64,000 nucleotides of DNA from assembly GCA_964106915.2 (NCBI GenBank), contig OZ066923.1; one strand, written 5' to 3'. Within the stretch, counting starts at the first letter, position 1. Every line of letters begins with the position of its first letter. Positions 2,447-60,893 of this stretch are shown here, in pieces. Position numbers and translations under genes: made by a program. Origin of the DNA: Podarcis gaigeae (taxonomy: Eukaryota). The notes under the pieces were generated by a model. The model made no database searches. It saw only the letters and a list, made by a program, of their open reading frames with translations, and was not told the origin of the DNA.

Positions 2447-3095
2447 NNNNNNNNNNNNNNNNNNNNNNNNNNNNNNNNNNNNNNNNNNNNNNNNNNNNNN
2501 NNNNNNNNNNNNNNNNNNNNNNNNNNNNNNNNNNNNNNNNNNNNNNNNNNNNNNNNNNNNNNNNNNNNNNNNNNNNNNNNNNNNNNNNNNNNNNNNNNNN
2601 NNNNNNNNNNNNNNNNNNNNNNNNNNNNNNNNNNNNNNNNNNNNNNNNNNNNNNNNNNNNNNNNNNNNNNNNNNNNNNNNNNNNNNNNNNNNNNNNNNNN
2701 NNNNNNNNNNNNNNNNNNNNNNNNNNNNNNNNNNNNNNNNNNNNNNNNNNNNNNNNNNNNNNNNNNNNNNNNNNNNNNNNNNNNNNNNNNNNNNNNNNNN
2801 NNNNNNNNNNNNNNNNNNNNNNNNNNNNNNNNNNNNNNNNNNNNNNNNNNNNNNNNNNNNNNNNNNNNNNNNNNNNNNNNNNNNNNNNNNNNNNNNNNNN
2901 NNNNNNNNNNNNNNNNNNNNNNNNNNNNNNNNNNNNNNNNNNNNNNNNNNNNNNNNNNNNNNNNNNNNNNNNNNNNNNNNNNNNNNNNNNNNNNNNNNNN
3001 NNNNNNNNNNNNNNNNNNNNNNNNNNNNNNNNNNNNNNNNNNNNNNNNNNNNNNNNNNNNNNNNNNNNNNNNNNNNNNNNNNNNNNNNNNNNNNN
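2447..3095. other. Assembly gap (649 N)
   Basis: Run of N. Confidence 1.
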
Positions 3096-7290: not shown

Positions 7291-9192
7291 TATTTTAAAT
7301 GAGATGCACAGTGTAGTAGCTTATATAGGACAACAGTACTATTGCAAATAATTTGTAACCATGACAACAAAGTCTGAACATACTGTTTCACGTTAGAGGA
7401 ACCTCACCTGTGTTTATACAGCTTCACAACTACTGCTTGTTGTGTAAGCACTGGTATTTTAAACCCTGCATTCTAGTTTAGGCCACTACGTAAGAAAGTT
7501 ACAGGTTGGGCTGGCATTAGTAAGCATTATTAACCTCTTGGTGAGGAAGCAATGTCAGATTTACTCATCTGAAATCAGGGCAGAAATGTACAAATGTGAA
7601 CAAAAATGCAGCAATTATAGGAACATGAATAAATAAGGTAAGCAGAAACAAATAAATTCATACACCTTTACTGCTCTCTCTCATATTTAACTGTCAGTTC
7701 ATTAGAGCTATGCAAGCAGGTCTCATTCTAATTCAGGTGTTGCTTTACAACACAGAGGAACTTGTCATTTCAGCACTCTGGTTAGCTCCAGGACTCAGCT
7801 TGCAGCTTCAGGATCACCTACTCTAGGAGACCCCATTTCACCTTTGATACAGCAGGTTCTATTTCCTAATGTTGTATTGTGTTCAAACTCTTCCCCGGCT
7901 TTCCCATCCTACATTCTAAATATGAACTTTCCATGAAGATTTTGGAGGCAACCCATTATGGTGGGTTACCTTGAAACAGCTGGCTCTGGGAAACTTTATT
8001 TCTAATGAATATGCAGACTAGGGTTGAGGAAACCTGCAAGTGGACTTACACACACACACACAAACCAACTAGACATGGAAGATCCAGTTCCCCACCTCTG
8101 CCAGAGAGCGTTGGCTTTTATGGTGATTGTAGCTTCCCTCCCCAGCTGCATTATCCATGAATTCCTGTCCAACCCATGCAGCAATTAAAAGTTGTATTTT
8201 ATTATTTTGTCAACTACCTTAAAGGCTCCTTAAAAGAAAAGGGCAAGTGGAATCAAAGAATAAAAGCAAGACTTTTAAAGAATGAACATCAGAAGCCAGT
8301 CAGGTAACTTTTTAGTCTTCTCTTTACTGTTGTAAGTCTCTTCTATTATGCAGTCATCTACTAGTTGGAACACAAACGACTTATTTTGCTTTCATTGTTG
8401 TCTGGGTTTAGAGAAATACTACCATTTACTAAATGGCAAATTAAACTTAAGAGAATGATTGCAACTGACATCTGAATGGAGAAGACCCATTGCTTTTACA
8501 TTTCAAAAACACTGGCTGCAATAAGGAGGCATCATTCCTCAATGTCCCATAATTCCAAGATTATTTTAAATCTTTAAACTTTGGCTCTCCATATGCTGTT
8601 GTACTCCAACTCACATCAGCAAAACCCAGCATGGCCAAGGGTGAGGGACGATATAAGTTGTAGTTCAACAACATCTGGAGGGCTACAGGTTCCCCATCCC
8701 TACTTTAAATCCACACTTTTGTCGGGCAGGAAAGGAATAGCTATATCCTTTCTATTTCTCAGGGCTATTCCTAGTGGTTGTCACCTAATTTTTTGGATGT
8801 TACTTGCTTACATGCAGGCTTACATCAAGAACAGTTATCCCACTTCATGGGTGGATCACCCCTCTGATGTTATTGATGACTGAGCCTGCTGATTAGACAC
8901 CATTAAAAAGGAAATATTTTCTCCTCTGCTTTTAAATTCCTGAACCATTTTAAATCACTCCTCAGAGTGCTAAACTGACTCTGACTTCTTACATCAGGAA
9001 TGGGAAACCTGTGACCCTAATTCTGGAACCCCAAATTGCACTGCTGGATAAATCTCAGATATTTTAAATAAATAAAGGAAGCAATAGTGTTGTCAACAAA
9101 CTTTAAATGTTAAGTTTCACAGTTTGATTTTAATATAGACAATGCTCATGTTTTTCTAAAACTAATTCGAAAAATGAGACTGCCTTAATTCA

Positions 9193-9255: not shown

Positions 9256-10254
9256 AACAGCAGTGTCACCTTCTTTTGCTGCTCATTCACTAAAAGTAGT
9301 GAGGTATGTGTCACAAATATTTCTCTGCTCTTTGGCATAATACAGAGAATTAGTTATCTATGTATACGCTTGACTTCTGTTCCTCAAGCAGGAAAATCCT
9401 CATGAGTACTAGAGGGTTTTCCACAGCACAAATGATCAAAAAGCATCTTCATCTATCTCATCCGCTCCAGGCACAGAATACAGCAGTCAAGGGTACTTCA
9501 AATCCAGAGGCTGCTTCAACAGCTGATTGCTTGGGTAAGCAGATTTCAAATTCATTGGCATTCTTGCCATGTAGGTATGGATTTCAAGCTGCACTGACAG
9601 CATCCTTTGGTCACAAACCAAAGTTTGCATCCTTTCATTGCAAACTTCAAAGTCAATTGATTACATAAGAGTGCAATGTGTTTTCTGTGTGATGCTGAAC
9701 CAAAGGAAATCAGGAGGGATGCAACTGACCTTGTGCGATATACTTCAGTACCTCAGGAATTTCCGGGGGAAAGAAGCGAGAAAGTGTGAATTCTCATGAG
9801 TGGGCTGCTGAATGGCAATGCCTTTCAGGACAATTTAAGATCATGTATACTATTTATTACGACAACTAAAGCAATGCACATTCCTGGCTACATTAAAAAC
9901 AAAAAAAGCCTCTATGTTCTTCTATTTGATTCTAAATCTAAATAGTTACAGTAGTCTTACATCACTTGGGCAACACATTTTTAAAGTAAGCAGAATGCTG
10001 GCAGCAATTCTACATCTGTTGTATATGTATTCAATGAAATATAGCGCTCAGTTTAAAAAAATTAAAACTGTGGTGTTCTCCTTTGTTTCAGTAAGTGCTC
10101 ACAAACCAAACAGCAACTGTGAAGCTAGAACTAGAGCAGGAATGAGGAACCTGTAGTTCTGTAGTTGTTGCTGGACTGCAAGCCCCATCATCCCTGACCA
10201 CTGGCCATGTTGGCTAGAGCTGATGGGAGTTGGAGTCCAACCACTTATGTGGAG

Positions 10255-12366
10255 CAGTGTTTCCCAACCAGTGTTCCGCGGCACACTAGTGTGCCGCGAG
10301 ACTTTGCCTGGTGTGCCGTGGGAGGGAGGCGGGCTCCATGTGCTTAGAGCAACAGGCTGCCGCCCCAAGCCTCGCGCCCGACGGGAGCTCCTGCCGGGTG
10401 CGCAAGGCTTGCAGACACTCGCCCGAAGCACGGGGCAGCCTCCGGAGGGCTCTGCGTGCTTCGGGCAACAGGCTGCCGCCCCAAGCCTCGCGCGCCCAGC
10501 GGGAGCTCCTGCCGGGCGCGCAAGGCTTGCAGACACTCGCCCGAAGCACGGGGAGCCCTCCGTAGGGCTCCCTGTGCTTCGGGCAACAGGCTGCCGCCCC
10601 AAGCCTTGCGCGCCTGGCAAGAGCTCCTGCCGGGCGCGCAAGACTTGCAGACACTCGCCCAAAGCACGGGCAGCCCTCCGTAGGGCTCCCTGTGCTTCGG
10701 GCAACAGGCTGCCGCCCCAAGCCTTGCGCGCCTGGCAGGAGCTCCTGCCGGGCGCGCAAGGCTTGCAGACACTCGCCCGAAGCACGGGGAGCCCTCCGTA
10801 GGGCTCCCTGTGCTTCGGGCAACAGGCTGCCGCCCCAAGCCTTGCGCGCCTGGCAGGAGCTCCTGCCGGGCGCGCAAGGCTTGCAGACACTCGCCCAAAG
10901 CACGGGGAGCCCTCCGTAGGGCTCCCTGTGCTTCGAGCAACAGGCTGCCGCCCCAAGCCTTGCCGCCTGGCAGGAGCTCCTGCCGGGCGCGCAGGGTTGC
11001 AGACACTCGCCCGAAGCACAGGGAGCCCTCCGTAGGGCTCCCTGTGCTTCGGGCAACAAGCTGCCGCCCCAAGCCTTGCGCGCCTGGCAGGAGCTCCTGC
11101 CGGGCGCGCAGGGTTGCAGACACTCGCCCGAAGCACGGGCAGCCCTCCGTAGGGCTCCCTGTGCTTCGGGCAACAGGCTGCCGCCCCAAGCCTTGCGCGC
11201 CTGGCAGGAGCTCCTGCCGGGCGCGCAAGGCTTGCAGCCACTCGCCCGAAGCACGGGGAGCCCTCCGTAGGGCTCCCTGTGCTTCGGGCAACAGGCTGCC
11301 GCCCCAAGCCTTGCCGCCTGGCAGGAGCTCCTGCCGGGCGCGCAGGGTTGCAGACACTCGCCCGAAGCACGGGGAGCCCTCCGTAGGGCTCCCTGTGCTT
11401 TGGGCAACAGGCTGCCGCCCCAAGCCTTGCGCGCCTGGCAGGAGCTCCTGCCGGGCGCGCAAGACTTGCAGACACTCGCCCGAAGCACGGGCAGCCCTCC
11501 CGTAGGGCTCCCTGTGCTTCGGGCAACAGGCTGCCGCCCCAAGCCTTGCGCGCCTGGCAGGAGCTCCTGCCGGGCGCGCAGGGTTGCAGACACTCGCCCG
11601 AAGCACAGGGAGCCCTCCGTAGGGCTCCCTGTGCTTCGGGCAACAAGCTGCCGCCCCAAGCCTTGCGCGCCTGGCAGGAGCTCCTGCCGGGCGCGCAGGG
11701 TTGCAGACACTCGCCCGAAGCACGGGCAGCCCTCCGTAGGGCTCCCTGTGCTTCGGGCAACAGGCTGCCGCCCCAAGCCTTGCGCGCCTGGCAGGAGCTC
11801 CTGCCGGGCGCGCAAGGGTTGCAGACACTCGCCCGAAGCACGGGGAGACCTCCGTAGGGCTCCCTGTGCTTCGGGCAACAGGCTGCCGCCCCAAGCCTTG
11901 CGCGCCTGGCAGGAGCTCCTGCCGGGCGCGCAAGGCTTGCAGACACTCGCCCGAAGCACGGGGAGCCCTCCGTAGGGCTCCCTGTGCTTCGGGCAACAGG
12001 CTGCCGCCCCAAGCCTTGCCGCCTGGCAGGAGCTCCTGCCGGGCGCGCAGGGTTGCAGACACTCGCCCGAAGCACGGGGAGCCCTCCGTAGGGCTCCCTG
12101 TGCTTCGGGCAACAAGCTGCCGCCCCAAGCCTTGCGCGCCTGGCAGGAGCTCCTGCCGGGCGCGCAGGGTTGCAGACACTGGCCGGAAGCACGGGGAGCC
12201 CTCCGTAGGGCTCCCTGTGCTTCGGGCAACAGGCTGCCGCCCCAAGCGGCATATAGTCAATATAGGCACAGAGTTAATTTTTTAAACATTTTCTAATGGT
12301 GGTGTGCCTCGAGATTTTTTTCATGAAACAAGTGTGCCTTTGCCCAAAAAAGGTTGGGAAACACTG
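10255..12366. mobile_element. Non-autonomous hAT transposon carrying about 16 x 118-bp double-hairpin tandem repeat
   Basis: Perfect 15-bp TIRs CAGTGTTTCCCAACC / GGTTGGGAAACACTG; 8-bp TSD ATGTGGAG (10247-10254, 12367-12374); inserted into an older short MITE (about 10137-12395). Confidence 0.93.
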
Positions 12367-15300
12367 ATGTGGAGCCACAGGTTTCATTTCCCCCAATTTG
12401 GAGTAAGATAATTACAGGGCCGTCATCTTTTTATAAAATCTACAGGGATTTGTGCAGTACAAATAACTAAGTGAAATTAATTAACCAGATGCTAGATACA
12501 GGCAATAAAAAGGGTGTGGTTTCTTAACTTCTTTTTTGAACTAGCCTCAAAGTGACTTTCAACAGATTTCAATAATATTTGAAACCAAGGCAATATTTAA
12601 AAGCCAGCCCCTCTCACAAGGAAGTATTAATCACTACCCTGGCCTGGTCAGCTGTCCTCTCCCTGCTACTTTTTATCAGCAATGAGGGGCAAGGAGCAAG
12701 AGCCTGGACCAAACCAAGCACCTTGTCCATATCTTCTAACTTTGCTAAGATAACTGGACTCTGCATGGCTCTTGAGATTCATCTCCTGTAACAGCAGTGT
12801 CAAGGTCCTGGCAGATGCAAGTGATTTTATCCTCAAAATGTTTTGCAAATGAGTCACAGAGAGCTCAGGTCAGTAGAAAAGGCCAAAGCCCTTCAGTTCT
12901 GCAGACCCAGGGCTACTCCCATCCCTGCCTGAAAACACATGGAAGGTGACAGATTCCTAGAAATTTCTGTTCATATAGCTTTGTTCCCATCATTGACCAT
13001 CACTACACTCACTCGGGGCTGATGGTGCCTGTGAAACCAACAGCAGTTATCCACAGATTAGGTGTGTGCTATCATTATAAGCTAATGATTCTGTGTGCCT
13101 TGCTCCTGTTTATGGTTTTGGTCTACCACAAGGCATAAGTACAATAAGAGCAGGATCCAGACAGCTCTCTTAATTGGGAAAGCAGGGACAGGGTGAAGGG
13201 CAATTTTACATGCCATCAGCTGATCTCATCATCACATGGAAAACTGACAACATTGTGGGGAAGGAAAAACAAGGAAATGATGGTCATGAACTTGTTCAAG
13301 TAAAGAAGAAAAAAACTCATTTGAATTTTAATGTAAGCTGTTGTTTTGCTTCATATTTATAGAAAAAATGCTATTTAATTCCCACAGGTATACAAAGCTG
13401 TAACACTTAATCATTAGGGGCTTTTTTTCCTGAATAAAATAACCCACACATTTTGTATTTGGGTTTATGAGATACATTCACACATTAGTGTCATCTTGTC
13501 AAGTTCTTCTCCAAGGCGTTCAGAGGTGGAAGACAATTTAAACACTGACAGCCGAGTTCTTCAGGATTGCAGATGCAAGAGCTTTGGAGGGAAAATGTTT
13601 AAAAGCACTGCGATGATGTCACAAGTGTGTGAGTACAGGAAGATCTCCATGATGCCCCATCAATCCACTCACAGAGAATCTAGTTAGCACTGAATATACA
13701 ATTACCCCAAGCCAAGAAAGTAATTAGACCAAACTCTCTTTCCCCTCCCTTCTCCCCTCCCCTGCAACTCACTTCACCTAGTGCTTATCAATAAATATGA
13801 AGCACTGTTCATTTCAGCAACCCAAGAACCTGCTAACACAAACAATTGCTAAATAGCTGAGCTGTTTTGAGCACAGACGCAAAACAGTATAGCTGCTACT
13901 ATGCCTTAATGAAATTAATTTGCGATCAGCTATGTGGTAGCAACAGGAGCTTCAAACCTGTTGCTGGTGGAATGCATAGCAGTAACTAATAAATGCAACA
14001 TTGCAAGGCAAGACCATGTTTTGTAAAAAGTGCCTCATGGAATAGGAACACACATAAAATACACAACTCCTGAGCCCGACAAGGCTACAGCTGCAGCAGT
14101 CATTCAAGCATTCCCCTTTGTCTGTTCAGTGCTAGCAGGTGTCCTTTGAAGATAGTAAGCAATATGAGTAGTTTGCATCCAGCAAACTATTCTGCAGAGC
14201 ACTTAAGCAAAAATATACTGCATTCATTGAGGATTTCTGAAAGTAGTTTTACCTTCAAAGTCAGAAAAGGGAGAAGACTCTAAAATCTTATCCTTTATGT
14301 TTATATGTTTTGCATTTGTGATATTTTTACCAATGTTAAATAAATAACCATAAAGGAGAGAATGCCTCTTCTGAGATGGCACTGATGCTTTCCAGAGCTG
14401 CATGGTGATGCATACATGAGTCACAGGAAGCATTGTCAGAGAAAAGATATCATGGTTTGGCTTAGCATTTCATCCACTCTCTTGGTCAGCCAAGAACAAA
14501 ACCTTTGATACAGTGGGTGGTTTGTCTGGAGTGAGTTTGACTTAGCATTACATGCAAACCAGGTCTATGTACATCATCTCTTCAGCCTAAATGAGTGGAT
14601 ACTGCCCACCAGTTTAGGGATGGCTCAGAAAGAATCTGTTCAAGGACTCTGGTAGAACTGTAGCTGAGTCAGTGTTGTTATATTATCTTAATTTGTATGC
14701 TGCATTTCCACATAACTATGCCCTAAGTGATGAATAACACACAAACTAACACCTATCAATGCATCACTACAATAGACAACCTGGTACAATTTCATTTAAA
14801 ATCCAAATATAACAACTCAACTCAACAATACTAACATTGTGAAATATTAAGTTCATTACAAGGTCAGCAATGTTAGTTCCCGAAACATTGACCAGTGCCC
14901 TGTGCTCATGAATTGCAATGTTTCCTGAAGTCATAAAAATGAGCAATTTTTCCAAGTGCTGTCTAATTTGTTAGCAGCTGTTGCTTCACAAGCAGAGAAA
15001 CACTTGATTTTCTTATGATTTTTTTTATTGTTGGAAATGAAAATGCAGACATTAAAATTCAATTCAACAACCAATTATAGTAACCAATATCTTCAATACC
15101 ACTAGCAAAATAGATAAATAAGGTTTTCAATGGTTCTCAGCAACCTGACTCCAGTTGAAAATGGTGGTTCTATAACTGAAGTGTTGGCATTTCAAGACTG
15201 AAAACTTGGGATGTAAAACACTAGAAACTGGATTCATAAATATCAGTTACTTCATACACAATAGACAAAATACAGGGCAACCACAACAATCAGCAGATTG

Positions 15301-16680: not shown

Positions 16681-16752
16681 CTTTTTCTGATCTTCTAGCT
16701 TGTGGCTGAGCGGATTCCTTCCATACCTGCTCATTTCTGAAGGTAAATCCAT
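16681..16752 (-). CDS. NAV3: Neuron navigator 3 alternative first coding exon (24 codons, MDLPSEMSRYGRNPLSHKLEDQKK, phase 0)
   Basis: ATG at 16752, GT donor at 16680-16679; peptide matches my recollection of the vertebrate NAV3 upstream-isoform N-terminus (compare NAV2 ...IHGLEDQKR before IYTDWANH); later exons are not in the window; not database-verified. Confidence 0.78.
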
Positions 16753-17084: not shown

Positions 17085-17724
17085 CTGTTGAGGAGGGGGG
17101 AAAGACATTTAATTATTACTATATTTTTCTTTTTATATGTGGAAGAAGCTGGTTAACTGAGAAGCAAATTATCAGTAAAAATATAGTATACACAAAAGGT
17201 TTATTCAGTCATTTCCTCAACATATATACTGAGAAATGTCCCATCCAAGAGTCCAGTGGGTCTTATTTCCAACTAAGTGTGATTGCCCAGTTTTCCCTTT
17301 TGCCCAACACAACGTACTGAACAGCCTTTAAAGTAAATGCATTTATTGGAAGCCCCATTGGTTTCAACGCAGTTTCCAAGGATGAAACTGCAACCTTATG
17401 GCCAATCCTCAAAAAGTGTGAAATTGCAGCTTTTAACCCCTGGCTCATAACCAACAACAGAGCAACAGCACCTTGAGCAACACAAAGCTAGACTAAGCTA
17501 GACCTGTCATCTTCCATGGCAGGTAGGTGCATGAAGTTATCAGGCAGTTCAGATCTAGGCAGCTTTAAGGATGAAGGGTCTCAAGGCTTGCTGGTAGAGT
17601 GACGAACACTTTTGAGGTCCACCTGCAAACACCCACTCGGAGTTGTGGAGCCCTGGGAGGTGGTGAAGCACCCTACTCACCCAAAAGGGTGATGTTCACA
17701 GGAAGGCAGTACCTTCCCTTAAAC

Positions 17725-19249
17725 CAGTGTTTCCCAACCAGTGTTCCGCGGCACACTAGTGTGCCGCGAGACTTTGCCTGGTGTGCCGTGGGAGGGAGGC
17801 GGGCTCCATGTGCTTAGAGCAACAGGCTGCCGCCCCAAGCCTCGCGCCCGACGGGAGCTCCTGCCGGGTGCGCAAGGCTTGCAGACACTCGCCCGAAGCA
17901 CGGGGCAGCCTCCGGAGGGCTCTGCGTGCTTCGGGCAACAGGCTGCCGCCCCAAGCCTCGCGTGCCCAGCGGGAGCTCCTGCCGGGCGCGCAAGGCTTGC
18001 AGACACTCGCCCGAAGCACGGGGAGCCCTCCGTAGGGCTCCCTGTGCTTCGGGCAACAGGCTGCCGCCCCAAGCCTTGCGCGCCTGGCAAGAGCTCCTGC
18101 CGGGCGCGCAAGACTTGCAGACACTCGCCCGAAGCACGGGCAGCCCTCCGTAGGGCTCCCTGTGCTTCGGGCAACAGGCTGCCGCCCCAAGCCTTGCGCG
18201 CCTGGCAGGAGCTCCTGCCGGGCGCGCAAGGCTTGCAGACACTCGCCCGAAGCACGGGGAGCCCTCCGTAGGGCTCCCTGTGCTTCGGGCAACAGGCTGC
18301 CGCCCCAAGCCTTGCGCGCCTGGCAGGAGCTCCTGCCGGGCGCGCAAGGCTTGCAGACACTCGCCCAAAGCACGGGGAGCCCTCCGTAGGGCTCCCTGTG
18401 CTTCGGGCAACAGGCTGCCGCCCCAAGCCTTGCGCGCCTGGCAGGAGCTCCTGCCGGGCGCGCAAGGCTTGCAGACACTCGCCCAAAGCACGGGGAGCCC
18501 TCCGTAGGGCTCCCTGTGCTTCGGGCAACAGGCTGCCGCCCCAAGCCTTGCCGCCTGGCAGGAGCTCCTGCCGGGCGCGCAGGGTTGCAGACACTCGCCC
18601 GAAGCACAGGGAGCCCTCCGTAGGGCTCCCTGTGCTTCGGGCAACAAGCTGCCGCCCCAAGCCTTGCGCGCCTGGCAGGAGCTCCTGCCGGGCGCGCAGG
18701 GTTGCAGACACTCGCCCGAAGCACGGGGAGCCCTCCGTAGGGCTCCCTGTGCTTCGGGCAACAGGCTGCCGCCCCAAGCCTTGCGCGCCTGGCAGGAGCT
18801 CCTGCCGGGCGCGCAAGGCTTGCAGACACTCGCCCGAAGCACGGGGAGCCCTCCGTAGGGCTCCCTGTGCTTCGGGCAACAGGCTGCCGCCCCAAGCCTT
18901 GCCGCCTGGCAGGAGCTCCTGCCGGGCGCGCAGGGTTGCAGACACTCGCCCGAAGCACGGGGAGCCCTCCGTAGGGCTCCCTGTGCTTCGGGCAACAAGC
19001 TGCCGCCCCAAGCCTTGCGCGCCTGGCAGGAGCTCCTGCCGGGCGCGCAGGGTTGCAGACACTGGCCGGAAGCACGGGGAGCCCTCCGTAGGGCTCCCTG
19101 TGCTTCGGGCAACAGGCTGCCGCCCCAAGCGGCATATAGTCAATATAGGCACAGAGTTAATTTTTTAAACATTTTCTAATGGTGGTGTGCCTCGAGATTT
19201 TTTTCATGAAACAAGTGTGCCTTTGCCCAAAAAAGGTTGGGAAACACTG
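17725..19249. mobile_element. Second copy of the same hAT family with about 11 x 118-bp units
   Basis: Same TIRs and termini as 10255-12366; different 8-bp TSD CCTTAAAC (17717-17724, 19250-19257); 587 bp (5 units) shorter. Confidence 0.93.
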
Positions 19250-19454
19250 CCTTAAACACTACCTTCTTACCTTGGTAGTGCTGGCTCGCAGAATTTGTTG
19301 TGCAGTTAGCATCACACAGCCTGCTTCCTTTCTGTAAATGTGCTGCACTAATTTAATGAATGTGGCCCAGTTCACCTAACCTTTGTGTCTTGCCTCCTTA
19401 TTTCCATACATGGTCACCATCAGTCCTTTAGTCACTGCCTTGTGACTCAGACTA

Positions 19455-19572
19455 GCCCAGGCTTCCTCAACCTCGGCCCTCCAGATGTTTTGAGACTACA
19501 ATTCCCATCATCCCTGGCCACTGGTCCTGTTAGCTAGGGATCATGGGAGATGTAGGCCAAAAACATCTGGAG
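19455..19572. mobile_element. Short squamate MITE (CCAGATGTT...CATCTGG family)
   Basis: Internal inverted repeat; relatives near 8580-8700, 10137-10254 and 40005-40095. Confidence 0.6.
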
Positions 19573-19846
19573 CTTCTTAGCACAATCAAGAAAGCTACAG
19601 AAAAAAGACAGCAACAGCATCTTAAGGACAAAACAAGATGTGATGGCAACAGACCCATTCAAACTCATGTTTGTACTGATAAATCAGATATGTGGTGGTC
19701 TGAAAGCAAAAATGATGCATTGGGGGCGGGGTGCTAGTTTGACTTTAATATAAAGTAATTAAGAGATAGAAAAACAGAATTCAGTGGTTTGTACCTTTTT
19801 GTAGAAGGACATAATAGATCAATGAAGTGATAAAATGTGTAACTAC

Positions 19847-19891: not shown

Positions 19892-21362
19892 GTAAAGCAG
19901 CTGATGCTTGTTTTCAAGTATATGCTAAAATCTGTAAAATATTGATTTACTTAGTGCAATTAAAAACTAAATTCAATTTGTATTAACCTTTTTTAAAAAG
20001 AAAGTTTCTGTGATTTTAAATATTCATTTTAAGTGCATAATATTTTCAGAACAGCACTGTCTTGTGAAAAGGTAGGGGAACATAGTTGAGATGATTTTTC
20101 TTCATTCATCCTTGGACCACGATTTTCCAGTAGGTTGGAGCTGTTGTTTTTCTTTTAATCAGGTAAAACTTTCGGTGTCAAGTTAGAATTCTGCCATATT
20201 TCTGGTAGAATTCAGGAAGACTGGGTATGCTAATCATGGCCTGCATGCTTCAATAATAATGCAAAAATTCTTATAAAGCCCCAATGTCACATTTCATGTT
20301 ATGTCTGTCTGCATAGTCAAAGAAGTTTGCAAAGTTAGAAACAAAATTATAGAATGGACTGACATTAGCATTTCACCTCGGGGTCTTTTAATGCCATTGC
20401 TTTGTGAGATGTGTCTTGTGGGAGGGGCACTGTTTTTCAAGGCGGGGGAGTCCCCTATCATTTATCGTCTACCAAAAGCTGGAGTCTGTCTTGATTCATA
20501 GAGTCCCCCAGAGCCACTTATCACTGGCCCAGCAATTTGTTACTTCCACACAAAGCATTCTCTGAAATTGGCTTGGATTCTGGCTCTACCCCTGTCAAAA
20601 AGTCAAATGAATATGCCCTCTATCTTCTCCCTGCCTCATTTTCAAGTAAATAGCAGCTTCCCTGTACAGATTGAGATGCCATGCACAGGACCCCAAACCT
20701 TCCGTTATTTATCATTTTATTTCAGTCTTGGAAAGGCTGCCAAGCAAGTATGTCCTTCCTTTTATCTCCTCCATCATTCAATTTGTTGGTCACCGAGCAG
20801 AAGAGAAAGAAAATATATCCAAGGTATACTCTAGACAGGTAGTCAATAACAATGTACTCTCACCCTGCTTTTCATTGCAATTATCCTATGGGTTTATTGT
20901 GCAAGATAGGTGTGTCCAAGGCACAACAAAACCTACACCATGGACTAAGAGTAAGTGACAGTCTTGAAAACAAACAGGGATATTACTTGAAAGCTAAAAT
21001 GCTGGAGACACATATGCCCTGGATTAGTTTTTCTTTTTCTTTCTTTCTTTCTTTCCTTCCTTTCTTTCTTTGATAATTAAAAATCAGAGATATAATCATT
21101 TTATAGTAAAACAAAACAAAGCATTGCACTGATTATGTAGTATTAAAGAAACATTTTGCTCAGAATTGGAGAAAAAACTCCTACCAACCATGAGCAAGAC
21201 TTTTCTTGAAAAGGCAAGTTTCACATCTGAGGCTGGAACGACAGCAGCATGATGAATGCACTAGTACAGGTGTAGCAATCCACACAGGCCTTGCTCCATT
21301 CCCTCTTCAAGTGCTTCTGTTTGGCTACAATGTATTATTGCACTGTGGTAATGCAGGAGTTA

Positions 21363-21717
21363 GGGATGCGGGTGGCGCTGTGGGTAAAACCTCAGCGCCT
21401 AGGACTTGCCGATTGCATGGTCGGCGGTTCGAATCCCCGCGGCGGGGTGCGCTCCCGTCGTTCAGTCCCAGCGCCTGCCAACCTAGCAGTTCAAAAGCAC
21501 CCCCGGGTGCAAGTAGATAAATAGGGACCGCTTACCAGCGGGAAGGTAAACGGCGTTCCGTGTGCTGCACTGGCTCGCCAGAGCAGCGATGTCACGCTGG
21601 CCACGTGACCCGGAAGTGTCTGTGGACAGCGATGGCTCCCGGCCTCTAGAGTGAGATGAGCGCACAACCCTAGAGTCTCTCAAGACTGGCCCATACGGGC
21701 AGGGGTACCTTTACCTT
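21363..21717 (+). mobile_element. Sauria SINE, full length
   Basis: A/B boxes, ACCTTT tail, 14-bp TSD TAATGCAGGAGTTA; same subfamily as 60493-60847. Confidence 0.93.
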
Positions 21718-23359
21718 TAATGCAGGAGTTAAGGACTGCATTCCCTTCTGAGCAAACTTCCTTGGGTCACAAACCAGTGGTGGGCAGGGTCAAAGGCAAA
21801 AGTGGCCAGAGCAAAAATTTTACCTTTGTACAATAGGCTAGTTTATACACCCACACCCACACAACCCTCTATCCTCCATCTAAGCAAGCAAAAGACATTA
21901 TCATCATAGTTCAAGGATGAATTCCAGCCAGGCAAAAACACGCAAGCAGGATGCAAAGCTGGGCTAATGAGGGGTGTGGCCTGAGGATCCCAACAACTAA
22001 ACAGAGAGGCCCAGAGGGTCATTTGCAGCCCTTGGCCTCAGGTCTGTACCCCCCCCCCCCGCTGGTGATAATGCCTCTTTTATTGACTGAATGGAGGGTG
22101 TGTGTGCACCACTTTGGGCTCTGTCTGGCCACTCTGTATAGACCCAATAAAATTACTGGACATTACTAACTCAGGTTCATTAGTTTCAGCGGGTATCCCT
22201 GGTTGAATACAACCCATTTTAGAAGTATAAAAAGTAGACATAAGGGGTGTTTATTATATTCTCTGGTATTCATTCTATTCTCAGGTATTGTGGTGCCCTG
22301 TAATAAACGGAGCAACTCAGATACAGGAATGATCTTTGGCTTAGCTCAGCAAAGAGAACTGCTGTTTAACTCACAGCACTCTATCATCCCTACAGCAGCA
22401 GTGAGGACCATGCAGATCAGGTAAGGAATACAAGGTACGGAGAGCAAGAAAATCAGACAGGACGTTGTACAGTAAAGCAGAGAGAAGTGTGCTTTAAGAG
22501 TACCAGTGAGAAAGGCAGGCAATAGTTTCTAGTAATAAGGTGGGAGATGGGTGCTGCAGAAAACATAATAAACAAGGCAGTGGTTATAACATAGCTCTGG
22601 TACTAAAGCTTCTCCCAATGTCCCTGAGGAGCAATCAGTAACTATGCAGCCCTTTCTTCATATTTCATTTCCCAAAAAGCAACATAGTTATGTTATACAT
22701 GGAGAATGAATGGCACACCATCACTTTTGGATGCTATTATTCTAATGCAAAACAAAACAAAAGATGGGACACAAGGTCATAGCAGTTGCTATATTGCATC
22801 ACATTAGAGATCCATCTGAACACAGCAAACTATATTCAGCAGAGGTAACCAAATACCCAGGCTAAGATTACAAACAGGGCATGATGAACATAGCCTTCCC
22901 TAGAGTTGGTTCCCAATTCTGGTAAACAGCGTTTATAAGGACACTGCATGTGCCATTAGTGGCTATGAAGACTGACCACCATACAGTTATGTCAATTGTT
23001 TCTGGAGTTAGTGGGTCTCAGAGCACCCTAGAGAAATAAAATCTATGATGACAACAAGCCCAAACAAACATAAGCATGCTTGAAGCTCATCAAAATCAAT
23101 GGGTATTAAAAGTGCACTCAAACCTGCAGTGACGTCTGACCCTTGTGCTTATCATGAATTGGGTAAGGAATAATTCGTTTGTTTTAATTTAACCTGTGTC
23201 AATTCATTTGGCCAATGACTGTGAGGTTCTCTATTTTCAGAACCCGAGGTTACAAAACTAGAGCAGAGGAATAAGGTCTATTTGAAGTGTTAATATTTAC
23301 CTTTTTTCATTTTTCAGCACAATGCAACATTGCCAATTTAACAATGAGCCACAGTGGTA

Positions 23360-24090: not shown

Positions 24091-26330
24091 ATCCAGCCTA
24101 GATGGTCTCCTCCTATTCTTCTTTTGGACTAAAAGAAACCCCTCTGTAGGCCTGTGTTTAGAGCCTTGCCAAAAAGCTGTATATAACCCTGTTTAAGAAA
24201 CTGTTTTCAAGAAACCCTGTTTATAACGGAGCCTGAATCATTACTCCAGTTTCAACATACACCACGTGCTGTTAAACTGAAATGCACACTGTTCAGGACG
24301 ATCCTAGACTTCACTGAAGCCAACAAAAAGACTTCCATGTGATCTAAACAGGCAATTGTCTATTTTAATGCTAGTCAGTATTGTGTCCATATATTGTTCT
24401 TCAGCTTTCAGAGCAGCTTCCAAATATCAAAGAGGAAACAGTCCCTGCTCTATATCCATGCTGCATTTGTTTCTATTACAATTGAGGACCTATAGAAACA
24501 GAAGGCACACAAAGGTGTCTTGCACACAAGATGCCAGAAACCAATGTACCTAAGAAAAACGGCTAAGACATAGATAAGAATGATTGCATTAATCCAACTG
24601 CCTTTTGCTTAGATCTAGCCCAAGCTATCCTTTCTCCATTGCCACTAAACTCATTACACAGTTTGATTTACTTACCTCTCAAGACAGGTACACTTTATTT
24701 CCCCGATTACTAACCTTTGGCTGCTTTACAATAGTCTTACATTGCTTTACATCTCAATTAGCTGACTATACTATATTCAGTTATGTCTTGCTGACCAGCT
24801 TTACAGGTACTCTAAAAAATAGAATAACATTTGACTTGAGAGTAAGTGCCACTAATATACTTGGCTAAGATGAAACAATAAATAATCATAAACCATATGA
24901 ACCTAGCCAGAATCAATATACTTCAGAGGGCATATTGCTGGCAGATGCAATAGCTTGCATCGAAATCCTAACCATACCTAAGTAGAAGTAAATGCCATTG
25001 AATTCAATAGAGCATAATTCTAGGTAGATATGCTTAGCATTGTGCTGTTAAATGTTGATATTGTTTGAACACACAGTGACACGTGACACTTCTAACAGAG
25101 AGTCCACCAAAGACCTTTCAAATATTAGCTGTTAATTTTCTCTTTTTGAAAAAATGTTTGTATTATAGTAATCTTTAAATGTAAAAGAAAAAACCACACA
25201 CCGTTACAACTTGAGCAAGAAACTGAACCACAAGATCTACAGTGTTTTATTTCTTCCAAAATTTCTGCCTAGTCTGTTCATCAAAATGTCTATTAAATGC
25301 ATCAGTATATTCTAGCTATGTTACAAGAGGTCAGAGAAGGTTTATAGAACAAAATCTACAAAGAAGGGGGGTGGGGGAGAGAGGGAGATTAGAAAGTTGT
25401 CAGATATTGCTAAAGCCTCAGAGACTGTTTTATGGATGTCTCCCAAACTAACAGCTAATAGGCCATTTTCTTTAATAGCTTTTTTAATAGTTAGGGGTCT
25501 TCTCTGCGGCTGACCAGTTGGTTTGCCAGTGCTGTTGATTTTGCTAATCTTTCTCTGGGCACCGTAATAGCAAGGTTAATGTGTTTTTCTACCCTAGTAA
25601 AGCTCAATATTATTGATGTGCTTAGGAGTCAAACATCTAAAGTTATATTTGTTTTATGGGTATTTTCTTATAAATATTTTTATCCAATACTGTATTATGC
25701 AAACTGCTCAGAGATATCATTAAGTGGCCAATACATTTTGTTAAATAAATAAAAAATAAATAACATGTTTTAACAAATAGTTGAAGTGAATATTTTAACA
25801 CATGTAAAAAACAGGGGGAATGGAAGAATCAACACACCCTAAAATGCTATGAACCACTAATCACTTACTGTACGAGGTGTTTTAATGTGACCAAGGAGCT
25901 CGTTGACATGGAGGAACTTCCCCAGTCATTCAGCAAAAGAACCCAATAAATTTTATGCCCCACCAACCCTCACACTGTCTCCCCTAAGCTGGGTGAGCAA
26001 GGCACTGGGCTTTGGGAAGTAGGTGTGAGGCTCTGGCAGGGTCCTGGAGCCCTCTCACCTCCTTCCCAAAGCTTGGAAAGCACTAACTACGCTTTGGGAA
26101 GGAGGCAGAAGGACTCTAGGATCCCTTCAGAGGTCCACCCAAAGCCCAGTGACTCACTTATCCAGCTTTCAAAAGGTGGTATGAGGTCTACGGGGCAGCT
26201 GCATGTTGGTGTTAGCAGTTTCACTCCTCCGATGCTACAGATGAGATTGTTGTAAATCACATGCCTGTCTGGGACAACTCTGGGAAAGGAAGAAGTCTTA
26301 TCTCTTCTGCTGCGGGTACTATTACACCGT

Positions 26331-26688
26331 AAAGGTAAAGGGACCCCTGACCATTAGGTCCAGTCGTGACGGACTCTGGGGTTGCAGCGCTCATCTTTAT
26401 TGGCCGAGGGAGCCGGCGTTTGTCTACAGACAGCTTCCGGGTCATGTGGCCGGCATGACTAAGCCGCTTTTGGCAAACCAGAGCAGAACATGGAAACGCC
26501 GTTTACCTTCCCGCCGGAGTGGTACCTATTTATCTACTTGCACTTTGACGTGCTTTTGAACTGCTAGGTTGGCAGGAGCAGGGACCGAGCAACGGGAGCT
26601 CACCCCGTTGCAGGGATTCCAACCATCAACCTTCTGATTGGCAAAGTCCTAGGCTCTGTGGTTTAACCCACAGTGCCACCCGTGTCCC
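26331..26688 (-). mobile_element. Sauria SINE
   Basis: Reverse complement of the 4460 subfamily; flanked by TTACACCGT / TTACACTGT TSD. Confidence 0.92.
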
Positions 26689-29600: not shown

Positions 29601-30639
29601 AGTGTGGCTTCATGGATATATATTTGATTAATTTAATGCCACTAATTAAAATTTGCTCTTGACACTTGATAAAAAACAGAGTAAAGTGTGCACCAGAGAG
29701 AAATGAATAAAGAGACCCATGGTAATTATAGTGAGGGACTCCAAAAGGTCATTTTGTCGTCTATCCTGGTCCCAAAGCCCATGTTCTCTCAAGCCCTTTA
29801 TTGCACTTTGATTTCAAAACCAGCTACAACAGAGATGAAAACCCTGCAGTGTCTCATCGGGCTCCCAACTCTCCTCTGCCACAACCATTATGACCAGTGG
29901 TCAGTGATAATGGAAGCTGTAACTTTTGCTGGGCCACAGGCTTCCACATCCTTGTACCACAGCAAGCAACCCACTGCTGTAACTACTGAACTAAAATAGC
30001 AAATGCAGGGAGTTTTAAAATTGTCGAATGGCTCTGTCACTACTAGAACACATGGAATGGATTTCTAAATATTACAAGCAGGGATCGGTAATGCTCTCCC
30101 AGTGTTCTGCTTATGACCATGCCTAGCCAATGATTCCTCACCTTCTACTTCTGGTTTCAGTAAGTACTCTGCCTGAATACGCTGCCTCTTGCTAATGAAA
30201 AGGATTCTGGGCCTCTGCTCCAATTCCTGCACTTAAATCTCAGTTCACCAACTTGCAGTCATTAGAGAAATGCCGGGGGCGGGGATTCCCTCAAATTTCT
30301 GACGAATAGCTTTTTTTTAAAAAAAAATGATTTCAGTGTGAAACACTAGGCTGAGGCTAAAGCAACTTGGGTGCTTGTAACACCAAGGAACACCATTATC
30401 TGAGCAGAAGGAGCTGATTGCCTGCAATTACCATTGTTATTTCTGCCCCAAATGTTATCAGTGCTTAAGGGAAGAACAGAAGCACAGCCCTGAAGAGCAT
30501 AGGGATAGAAAATTTCAGGACAAAAAACAGAGGCCAGGGGCATCACATATTTCTTCCATGTTTCATTTCCATGCCCTTTCCATTACAACCTCTTTCTTTT
30601 CAACAAACGGCTCTTACCCTTACCAAGGGGTATATGGGG

Positions 30640-39238: not shown

Positions 39239-40356
39239 TATTAACATTGTGCTCTCAACTGTTCTTTGATTTTTAGATAATAATAGCTATGCTTATTGCT
39301 CAGCCTTCTCTAGATTGTTAGATTGCTGCACATGGATTTTTAAGATCACTGCTTTACTACTGAGGTTAAGCAATGAATCATACAATTTATCGTTCAGTTT
39401 GATTTGCCTGAAGAGATTAAAACAGCATTCTAGCCAAGGATCACAGATCCACTGGTTTTTGTTTTTTTGTTTTTTTAAAAAAGCAGATTCCTGCTCTAAC
39501 AAAGTAAAGATATAAAACGCTAACCATTTTTAAAATCCTTATGAGTTGCCCAAGCAATTCAATGAATTCCTGACAAGAGTAAAAGGAAAACATCAATCAT
39601 TATTGGTGGAGAATAAAGGGTGGAGGGAGGCAAAGCTTCCAATAACCTTGCTTTTATCACAGAGGCCATTTTTCACAAGCTATGGGCTTGACAGTTTTCC
39701 ATGGTTAAAAGAAAATCATATTTCAATCCTGATGGTTGAAACATTAATATCTCATTACAACCAACTGGGATCATCTTGTAGAACAGCAGTGGGGGGAAAT
39801 ACAAAGCAAGGTATAAATAACACCTCCAATTTTTATAGTTGATGGGTACTATATCTGCTACCTATTAGACTCTCAAGTTTTAAAATGCTCACATTCACTG
39901 TTGTAGCATAGTGATCTGACATAGATAGTAAAGAATTAAAGGAATATAGAACCAACATTCCACTAGAATGGAGTTCTGTGAACGTATGACCTTCCATATG
40001 CACAATGGCCATCAGCTCTGACCATTGGCCACATGGGCCAGGGCTAATGGAAGTTAGAGCCCATCAGCATCTAGAGGGCCAGAGGTTCACCCGTGACTGC
40101 AACTAGATCTTGCTCTACTACCAGTGGCCCGATGTTGAAAGCGGCACTGGTAGCAAAGGGACTAGGAGCAGCATCAGTTTCACCCACAATATACTGCTGG
40201 AGTGAAGCCGCCATCACAGTCTGTCCCTCATAGCAGTCCTGGGTGATGTATCGATACATCGCCCAGGCCTAGAAGGGACCCCAAGCATCATATAGTCCAA
40301 GCCCCTGCAATGCAAGAATCTCGACTAAAGCATCAATGACAGATGGATAATAATAT

Positions 40357-60294: not shown

Positions 60295-60893
60295 CAGTGG
60301 TACCCCAGGTTACATACGCTTCAGGTTACAGACTCTGCTAACCCAGAAATAGTGCTTCAGGTTAAGAACTTTGCTTCAGGATGAGAACAGAAATCATGCT
60401 CTAGTGGTGCGGCGGCAGCAGGAAGCCCCATTAGCTAAAGTGGTGCTTCAGGTTAAGAACAGTTTCAGGTTAAGTACGGACCTCCTGTAGCTGGGACGTG
60501 GGTGGTTCTGTGGCTAAAACCTCAGCGCCTAGGACTTGCCAATCACATGGTCGGCAGTTTGAATCCCCGCGGCGGGGTGCGCTCCCGTCGTTCAGTCCCA
60601 GCGCCTGCCAACCTAGCAGTTCGAAAGCACCTCCGGGTGCAAGTAGATAAATAGGGACCGCTTATCAGTGGGAAGGTAAACGGCGTCCCATGTGCTGCGC
60701 TGGCTTGCCAGATGCAGCTTGTCACGCTGGCCACGTGACCCGGAAGTGTCTGCGGACAGCGCTGGCTCCCAGCCTATAGAGTGAGATGAGCGCACAACCC
60801 TAGAGTCTGGCAAGACTGGCCCGTACAGGCAGGGGTACCTTTACCTTTACGGACCTCTGGAACGAATTAAGTACTTAACCTGAGGTACCACTG
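60295..60893. mobile_element. Tc1/mariner MITE interrupted by a Sauria SINE
   Basis: TIRs CAGTGGTACC / GGTACCACTG, TA TSD; the two halves rejoin to match 38997-39238. Confidence 0.9.
60493..60847 (+). mobile_element. Sauria SINE nested in MITE
   Basis: TSD TACGGACCTC (60475-60484, 60848-60857); same subfamily as 21363. Confidence 0.92.

What the first reader, a model, noticed from the sequence alone, without database searches (positions are those of the whole stretch)
10255..12366. hAT transposon carrying a satellite of 118-bp units, each built from two near-perfect hairpins
Seen: each unit consists of a 48-bp loopless palindrome (CAAGCCTTGCGCGCCTGGCAGGAG|CTCCTGCCGGGCGCGCAAGGCTTG) and a 21-bp stem with a 4-nt loop (GCCCGAAGCACGGGGAGCCCT-CCGT-AGGGCTCCCTGTGCTTCGGGC), joined by short linkers. 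About 80% of the array is therefore self-complementary, roughly 32 hairpins here. The single mismatch in each stem is a G-U wobble on the + strand, although CpG decay would give the same pattern. The array is CpG-rich in an AT-rich background. Known: MITEs can seed satellites and hairpin RNAs. Inference: this is a mobile cruciform or dsRNA cassette, whose 21-24 bp stems could be Drosha/Dicer or ADAR substrates or transposase-binding arrays, and it may be an undescribed squamate transposon-satellite family.
Basis: partly seen in the sequence, partly recalled or inferred. Interest (0 to 1): 0.8.

Follow-up and report, generated by a model that had tools for sequence, protein, structure and literature searches.

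The report
Lizard transposon carrying hairpin minisatellite
A young, gene-less cut-and-paste transposon of lizards (wall lizards by earlier scan notes) carries a variable-length run of GC-rich palindromic repeats as passive cargo; it has jumped recently (the one site tested is empty in another individual and in a related species), but I found no sign that its hairpins are selected or work as an RNA.

Summary
The structure is real. 10255-12366 is a non-autonomous hAT element with Buster/Charlie-type ends: perfect 15-bp TIRs, an 8-bp TSD, a 76-bp left end, 16.3 units of 118 bp, a 119-bp right end, no transposase. A sister copy (17725-19249, 11.3 units) has another TSD and identical ends. That site appears empty in two other DNA samples, one labelled as the same species as the best holder, so the family is recently mobile. 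Parts of it occur in six organisms.

The functional reading is not supported:
- Only 5 of 27 units have at most one defect in both stems, and no stem pair changes on both sides.
- Partner-matched changes do not exceed CpG decay.
- The array lacks the subterminal TGTGCC motif.
- RNA from a related species covers the unit at 0-5 reads deep, and its A>G sites also occur in DNA.

Small RNAs could not be tested. Best reading: a selfish element with a passive hairpin minisatellite that changes by whole units, a known kind (miDNA4, Xmix/Xstir, DTC84). I found no published description of this family. The scan already noted look-alike arrays on other DNA of this genome (near SIK1, in STX8 and ITGB1BP1).

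The parts
10247..10254 (+). Copy 1 left target-site duplication (ATGTGGAG), inside an older lizard MITE
   Evidence: the joined empty site aligns across the junction with sister MITE copies
10255..10269 (+). Copy 1 left TIR, 15 bp (CAGTGTTTCCCAACC)
   Evidence: perfect match to the reverse complement of 12352-12366
10255..10330 (+). Left end, 76 bp, with three TGTGCC-type subterminal motifs and a 22-bp palindrome at 10277-10298
10331..12247 (+). Array of 16.3 units of 116-119 bp; units 1-2 are divergent edge units, the interior mixes two unit types (order 1111122121221122)
10718..10765 (.). Hairpin A in a modal unit: 48-bp loopless palindrome with one T.G defect
10775..10820 (.). Hairpin B in a modal unit: 21-bp stem, 4-nt loop, one G.T defect
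12248..12366 (+). Right end, 119 bp, three TGTGCC-type motifs, right TIR at 12352-12366; its outer part is shared with sister families that have other interiors
12367..12374 (+). Copy 1 right TSD (ATGTGGAG)
16681..16752 (-). Short ATG-initiated reading frame of 24 codons followed by a GT donor, NAV3-like; lies between the two copies (gene identity not tested)
   Evidence: one search shows the frame and donor; the name comes from scan note s1-686504 and my own recollection of NAV-family N-termini
17717..17724 (+). Copy 2 left TSD (CCTTAAAC, nnnTAnnn type)
17725..19249 (+). Copy 2 of the same element: 11.3 units (array 17801-19130), same orientation; first 101 bp, unit 1, last three units and right end identical to copy 1
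19250..19257 (+). Copy 2 right TSD; contigs of two other samples match the right flank from this base on and run more than 2 kb leftward without the element
   Evidence: table 8, records 7 and 16

Best explanation
A young non-autonomous hAT transposon of the Buster/Charlie type. A transposase encoded elsewhere in the genome binds the TIRs and the TGTGCC-type subterminal motifs in the roughly 200 bp of ends, excises the element and inserts it at NTCTAGAN-like 8-bp targets. Shown: ends, TSDs, two independent insertions, an apparently empty orthologous site. Inferred: the transposase source. The 118-bp array is passive cargo. It descends from a more CpG-rich palindromic unit still found in related elements, possibly itself a dimer of a ~59-bp palindrome. 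It gains and loses whole units in the middle of the array while both edges stay fixed (shown between the two copies); slippage or interrupted gap repair, helped by hairpins in single-stranded DNA, is the inferred cause. The stems are near-perfect because the unit was born palindromic, the family is young, and the array homogenises internally; occasional arm-to-arm template switching may help but is not required by the data. The stems decay by CpG deamination and ordinary mutation without compensation.
For: Perfect TIRs and two different 8-bp TSDs. Letters behind the TIR in hundreds of reads read (G)TCTAGA, the target reported for Charlie-like hATs of Anolis (PMC3014272) and fitting the Buster consensus nnnTAnnn (PMC3517528). 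The copies differ by 5 substitutions in 1525 aligned bases plus three gaps of 2, 2 and 1 units. The copy 2 site lacks the element in X4 (organism A, another sample) and X6 (organism C). The same right end is joined to several array-free interiors (loose ends at 19134, 19137, 19177, 19179), so this end does not depend on the array. No pair changes on both sides; 13 of 45 pairs depart only by unpaired cells. Related units in other samples carry the states seen in the edge units (C18, C26, G30, G92, C102) plus C34 and C39. RNA/DNA depth ratio is 2e-4 on the array against 7e-4 on the terminal part. No Rfam match reaches a gathering score.
Against: The autonomous partner was not seen here (only scan notes of intact Buster elements, unchecked). 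For the empty site I saw contig lengths and coordinates, not the left-flank letters, and only one of the two sites was tested. The RNA data are from a related species, at shallow depth, and GC-rich hairpins are under-read in cDNA libraries. With 18 distinct, closely related units the covariation test has little power. The unique left end (76 bp) is close to the 64 bp that supported very limited activity in AnBuster (PMC12637253), so the first units might assist transposition.
Confidence: 0.8

Rival explanations
1. The array assists its own element: the GC-rich hairpin units supply extra transposase-binding or end-pairing sequence, or favour copying during gap repair, so that array-bearing copies out-replicate others.
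For: The unique left end is only 76 bp; AnBuster showed very limited activity with a 64-bp left end and was active with longer ones. Each unit has TGTGCT, one base from the subterminal TGTGCC (18 sites, 9.4 per kb against 0.85 in background). The derived unit state T92 is about ten times commoner in organism A than in C. Scan notes report similar GC-rich hairpin modules inside elements with unrelated ends (unchecked), and hairpin A appears with other neighbours in contigs.
Against: The exact motif occurs 6 times in 195 bp of ends and 0 times in 1917 bp of array. Sister families with the same right end and no array are far more abundant. A burst in one species needs no cis advantage.
Confidence: 0.12
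2. The array is a dsRNA cassette with a selected or biologically relevant role: when transcribed in introns it folds into ~48-bp inter-unit duplexes that are edited by ADAR or cut into siRNAs, affecting the element or host genes such as NAV3.
For: Extremely stable folds on both strands, with inter-unit duplexes. Copy 1 probably lies in an intron and copy 2 about 970 bp upstream of an ATG. A few RNA reads do cover the unit.
Against: No covariation. RNA depth is 1-5 reads in 12.8 million records of bulk RNA and 0 in a single-cell run; each A>G site in RNA also stands in DNA contigs. The tested insertion is not fixed, so it cannot be an established host element. The 21-24 bp stems with 0-4 nt loops are shorter than the ~35-bp stem with a larger loop that Drosha prefers (own knowledge). 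Incidental editing of a transcribed copy would not be a function.
Confidence: 0.06
3. The array length or the second copy is an assembly artefact.
For: GC-rich palindromic tandem arrays are hard to assemble; no contig laid spans the whole tested stretch.
Against: The copies have different TSDs and flanks and private variants, with an ordered unit pattern. The unit and the junction of left end to array are seen in independent DNA runs. The exact unit counts could still be off.
Confidence: 0.02

Closest known systems
Non-autonomous Charlie/Buster-like hATs of Anolis carolinensis (hAT-HT3_AC and its derivatives, hAT-N3_AC; PMC3014272)
   Same: 8-bp TSD with NTCTAGAN / NYYTARRN preference; TIRs CAGTGRTTCCCAAA and CAGTGGTTCCCAACCT differ from this TIR at one or two positions; families alike at the ends but different in the centre are reported there too.
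   Different: The text search found no mention of palindromes or internal tandem arrays in those families. Only TIR and TSD were compared, not the internal sequence.
hAT2_NA MITE of Manduca sexta and relatives (PMC3845634)
   Same: TIR CAGTGTTTCCCAAC equals the first 14 bases of this TIR; 8-bp TSD.
   Different: Insect element of 277 bp, too short for such an array. A shared TIR shows the same class of end, not the same family.
DTC84 of the clam Donax trunculus (PMC3879986)
   Same: Non-autonomous element acting as a cassette for a tandem array; ordered variants whose positions stay fixed while copy number varies; a palindrome in each unit proposed as a hotspot of length change.
   Different: Its palindrome is 12 nt per unit against 94 of 118 bases here; unrelated sequence and host, and not described as a hAT in the passages read.
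Xenopus Xmix/Xstir and miDNA4 (reviewed in PMC12628747, PMC9659126)
   Same: Vertebrate TIR elements carrying a variable number of tandem monomers; stem-loop formation during replication proposed as the source of tandem units.
   Different: miDNA4 is Tc1/mariner and Xmix a MITE, not Buster hAT; both also gave free satellite arrays, which I could not test here.
Inverted-repeat arm homogenisation by polymerase template switching (PMC8604942)
   Same: A neutral mechanism that makes imperfect palindromes more perfect; fits the C34-to-G change that closes the centre of hairpin A and the G-C to G.T to A-T path at pair 30-39.
   Different: Shown in yeast and bacteria; here the excess of partner-matched changes is not significant.

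Membership tests
hAT superfamily, non-autonomous | 8-bp target-site duplication | tested here: met
   ATGTGGAG and CCTTAAAC flank the two copies; other samples match the right flank from the first TSD base
hAT superfamily, non-autonomous | Short TIR (5-27 bp) starting with YARNG | tested here: met
   15-bp perfect TIR starting CAGTG; definition from PMC3014272 and PMC3517528
hAT superfamily, non-autonomous | No transposase; multiple dispersed copies | tested here: met
   Only repeat-derived ORFs, by inspection; two insertions here; element words in six organisms and high contig depth
Buster (Charlie) family of hAT | TSD consensus nnnTAnnn (NTCTAGAN) | tested here: met
   Copy 2 TSD has central TA; consensus letters behind this TIR in reads are (G)TCTAGA. 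Copy 1 TSD has TG at the centre, so it fits only loosely.
Buster (Charlie) family of hAT | Transposase falls in the Buster clade | not testable with these tools
   No coding sequence in the element; no eukaryotic genome search was available to fetch the autonomous partner
Tandem-repeat-carrying non-autonomous TIR elements (DTC84, miDNA4, Xmix/Xstir kind) | Internal head-to-tail array with variable copy number between conserved ends | tested here: met
   16.3 against 11.3 units, ends identical, whole-unit gaps
MITE in the strict sense | Short length (a few hundred bases) | tested here: not met
   2112 and 1525 bp; without the array it would be about 195 bp
Classical satellite DNA | Long arrays free of element ends, in heterochromatin | not testable with these tools
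   Both arrays here are under 2 kb and inside TIRs; no genome-wide view
Structured RNA / microRNA precursor | Two-sided covariation of stem pairs | tested here: not met
   0 of 45 pairs among 18 distinct units; 500 of 500 shuffles reach that value; low power
Structured RNA / microRNA precursor | Match to a curated RNA family | tested here: not met
   62 weak hits, all far below gathering scores, best 36 bits against 142
Structured RNA / microRNA precursor | Discrete 21-24 nt reads from the arms | not testable with these tools
   No small-RNA library among the listed runs
ADAR-edited repeat | A>G changes in RNA that are absent from DNA | tested here: inconclusive
   Two A>G sites in 3-5 reads, both also present in DNA contigs; no DNA from the same individual; related species

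The most novel reading that the evidence does not exclude
Lacertid DNA transposons share a kit of GC-rich hairpin modules that move between elements with unrelated ends, are kept symmetrical by arm-to-arm template switching, and give the carrier a replication advantage or deliver segregating CpG-island and dsRNA cassettes to genes; the two copies bracketing a NAV3-like first exon would then be a natural regulatory allele.
Probability: 0.12. Interest if true: 0.65.

Novelty: new member of a known kind. Interest (0 to 1): 0.3.

Why it matters
As it stands this is a probably undescribed, recently active lizard transposon family of a known architecture. Its value is as a study system. Roughly a hundred young copies with ordered unit variants would let one measure how a palindromic minisatellite gains and loses units, and whether palindrome arms correct each other in a vertebrate germ line. 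The filled and empty alleles next to a NAV3-like first exon also allow a clean test of whether a 1.3-kb CpG-rich insertion changes a host gene. Neither is shown here, and a function for the hairpins has no support so far.

Tried and rejected
Covariation in the 27 units: none. Excess of partner-matched CpG changes: P = 0.065 for the 6 common hits (three of them resting on an inferred ancestor) and 0.30 with polymorphic hits included, not significant. Rfam: nothing near threshold. Coding potential: the long ORFs are read-throughs of a GC-rich repeat in several frames on both strands, with frame changes at unit indels, and were rejected. Source of the unit elsewhere in the window: no BLAST hit outside the two copies. 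Other NAV3 exons in the window by a recalled peptide motif: none. Literature: the TIR string is found in one transposon paper only, an insect MITE; no paper found on a lacertid hAT with an internal array; Buster end sequences were not held as supplements. The bacterial promoter scan is irrelevant to a lizard and was ignored. I did not lay a whole element because the reads tool turns away long repeats, so the empty-site evidence is one-sided and for copy 2 only. Local hopping of one copy from the other is possible but untested: I could not compare them with other family copies. The 649 N at 2447-3095 were left alone. No protein-homology or structure search was used because the element encodes nothing.

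Full report
Observation. Tandem Repeats Finder gives a 118-bp period, 16.3 copies and 95% matches at 10331-12247, and a second array of the same unit, 11.3 copies, at 17801-19130. The modal unit holds a 48-bp loopless palindrome (hairpin A) and a 21-bp stem with a 4-nt loop (hairpin B); 76% of its bases pair. Folding is about 19 standard deviations below shuffles as RNA or DNA. The arrays are 72% GC with CpG observed/expected 0.70, against 41% and 0.26 elsewhere. The claim of a single mismatch per stem holds only for the modal unit: 5 of 27 units have at most one defect in both stems, and the mean is 2.7 defects in A and 1.6 in B.

Anatomy. Both arrays sit inside the same element: a perfect 15-bp TIR, a 76-bp left end, the array, a 119-bp right end and an 8-bp TSD. 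The TSDs differ (ATGTGGAG, CCTTAAAC), so these are two independent insertions. Copy 1 interrupts an older lizard MITE; the joined empty site aligns across the junction with sister MITE copies. There is no transposase; the long ORFs are repeat read-throughs. Each end carries three TGTGCC-type motifs and the array none.

Class. Reads and contigs that share this right terminus continue into (G)TCTAGA. That is the NTCTAGAN target reported for Charlie-like hATs of Anolis, whose TIRs differ from this one at one or two positions (PMC3014272), and it fits the Buster consensus nnnTAnnn (PMC3517528). The first 14 TIR bases equal those of an insect hAT MITE (PMC3845634). So it is a non-autonomous hAT with Buster/Charlie-type ends. 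The transposase clade could not be tested. The host is named as wall lizards only in earlier scan notes; the run list is coded.

Age and spread. The two copies are identical over the first 101 bp, unit 1, the last three units and the right end. They differ by 5 substitutions in 1525 aligned bases and by gaps of 2, 2 and 1 whole units. Words of the element occur in DNA runs of six organisms, with shares from 0.65 down to 0.17. At copy 2, contigs of about 2.4 kb from X4 (organism A, a different sample from the best holder) and X6 (organism C) match the right flank starting at the first TSD base and run on for over 2 kb without the element (records 7 and 16). I read these as empty sites, though the left-flank letters were not printed. 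Summed word depth is no copy number, but it puts unit-like sequences at about 1000-1800 times unique depth, and the derived T92 unit at about 900 times in A and 90 in C. That suggests on the order of a hundred elements in A (inference). The outer 60 bp of the right end is far more abundant and joins several array-free interiors.

History of the unit. The edge units 1 and 2 carry C18, C26 and G30; unit 1 also has G92 and C102. The same states, plus C34 and C39, are found in related units in other samples. So the edge keeps older states and the interior is a derived, homogenised subfamily. Pair 30-39 goes from G-C in relatives through G.T at the edge to A-T in the interior, and C34 to G closes the centre of hairpin A. 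This is what arm-to-arm template switching would do (PMC8604942). But independent CpG decay gives two matched pairs among six hits with P = 0.065, and three among eleven with P = 0.30, so it is not demonstrated. The two halves of the unit are weakly alike (P about 0.01 against palindrome-preserving shuffles, one test), which suggests a dimer of a ~59-bp palindrome. Hairpin A also appears with other neighbours and in a unit of about 111 bp in contigs. Unit order is fixed at both edges and variable in the middle, as in the clam element DTC84 (PMC3879986).

Tests of function. Among 18 distinct units none of 45 stem pairs changes on both sides, and 13 pairs depart only by unpaired cells; the test is weak on so young a set. 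No Rfam family approaches its threshold. In raw RNA of organism C the unit is covered 1-5 deep in a bulk run of 12.8 million records and not at all in a single-cell run, against 300-390 on the shared terminus. Relative to DNA depth the array is not enriched (2e-4 against 7e-4). The few reads carry the older unit states, and both A>G sites stand in DNA contigs too, so there is no evidence of editing. Small RNAs and methylation could not be tested. If a copy is transcribed it would form duplexes of about 48 bp between neighbouring units, long enough for incidental editing (own knowledge); that would be a by-product.

Context. A 24-codon minus-strand frame with a GT donor lies at 16681-16752. A scan note calls it the NAV3 start exon and it fits my recollection of NAV-family N-termini, but I did not test it. 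If right, copy 1 is intronic, 4.3 kb past the donor and read on the strand where the wobbles are A-C mismatches, and copy 2 starts 973 bp upstream of the ATG.

Mechanism and verdict. Most likely (0.8) a selfish element moved in trans through its ends, with the array as passive cargo that changes by whole units and decays without compensation. Rivals: the array aids transposition (0.12; the left end is short by AnBuster standards, PMC12637253), a functional dsRNA cassette (0.06), an assembly artefact (0.02). TIR elements carrying tandem arrays are a known kind, including in vertebrates (miDNA4, Xmix/Xstir). The unusual point is how much of the unit is palindromic. I found no published account of this family but could not query Repbase or Dfam. 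The scan has noted look-alike arrays at other loci of this genome. New member of a known kind; interest 0.3.

Noticed in passing
window:17725-19249 with 16681-16752: Copy 2, a 1.3-kb CpG-rich array, begins 973 bp upstream of the ATG of a NAV3-like first exon and appears absent from another individual: a possible natural regulatory allele.
   Followed up: partly
window:19250 (loose ends): In run X23, 92 RNA reads continue behind this TIR with a consensus of TCTAGAG followed by another TIR start: head-to-tail tandem hAT insertions sharing one target site somewhere in organism C.
   Followed up: no
window:19137 and 19177 (loose ends): Sister families share the right end but have other interiors and are well represented in RNA (82 and 118 reads); the one joining at 19177 has a TGACGTCA (CRE-like) motif next to the end.
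   Followed up: no
window:19009 and 19049 (loose ends and joints): Hairpin A occurs in other elements with different neighbours, including an extended palindrome and a tandem unit of about 111 bp: a modular family of hairpin units.
   Followed up: partly
window:48063-53122: Ty1/copia-like element on the minus strand with LTRs 94% identical over 333 bp and gag-, integrase- and RT-like ORFs in separate pieces; already noted by the scan.
   Followed up: no
window:2361-3095: A GC-rich 22-bp tandem repeat directly precedes a 649-base N gap (2447-3095); possibly another GC-rich repeat element. The gap was left unfilled.
   Followed up: no
window:10131-10254, 8584-8707, 19479-19573, 29865-29913, 40009-40063: Five diverged copies (73-78% alike) of an older short lizard MITE; copy 1 of the hAT landed in its conserved ATCTGGAG-like motif, which resembles the Charlie target site.
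   Followed up: partly
window:4459-4795, 21362-21719, 26327-26688, 60492-60852: Four copies of a ~360-bp interspersed repeat, 73-92% alike, probably a SINE; not identified.
   Followed up: no
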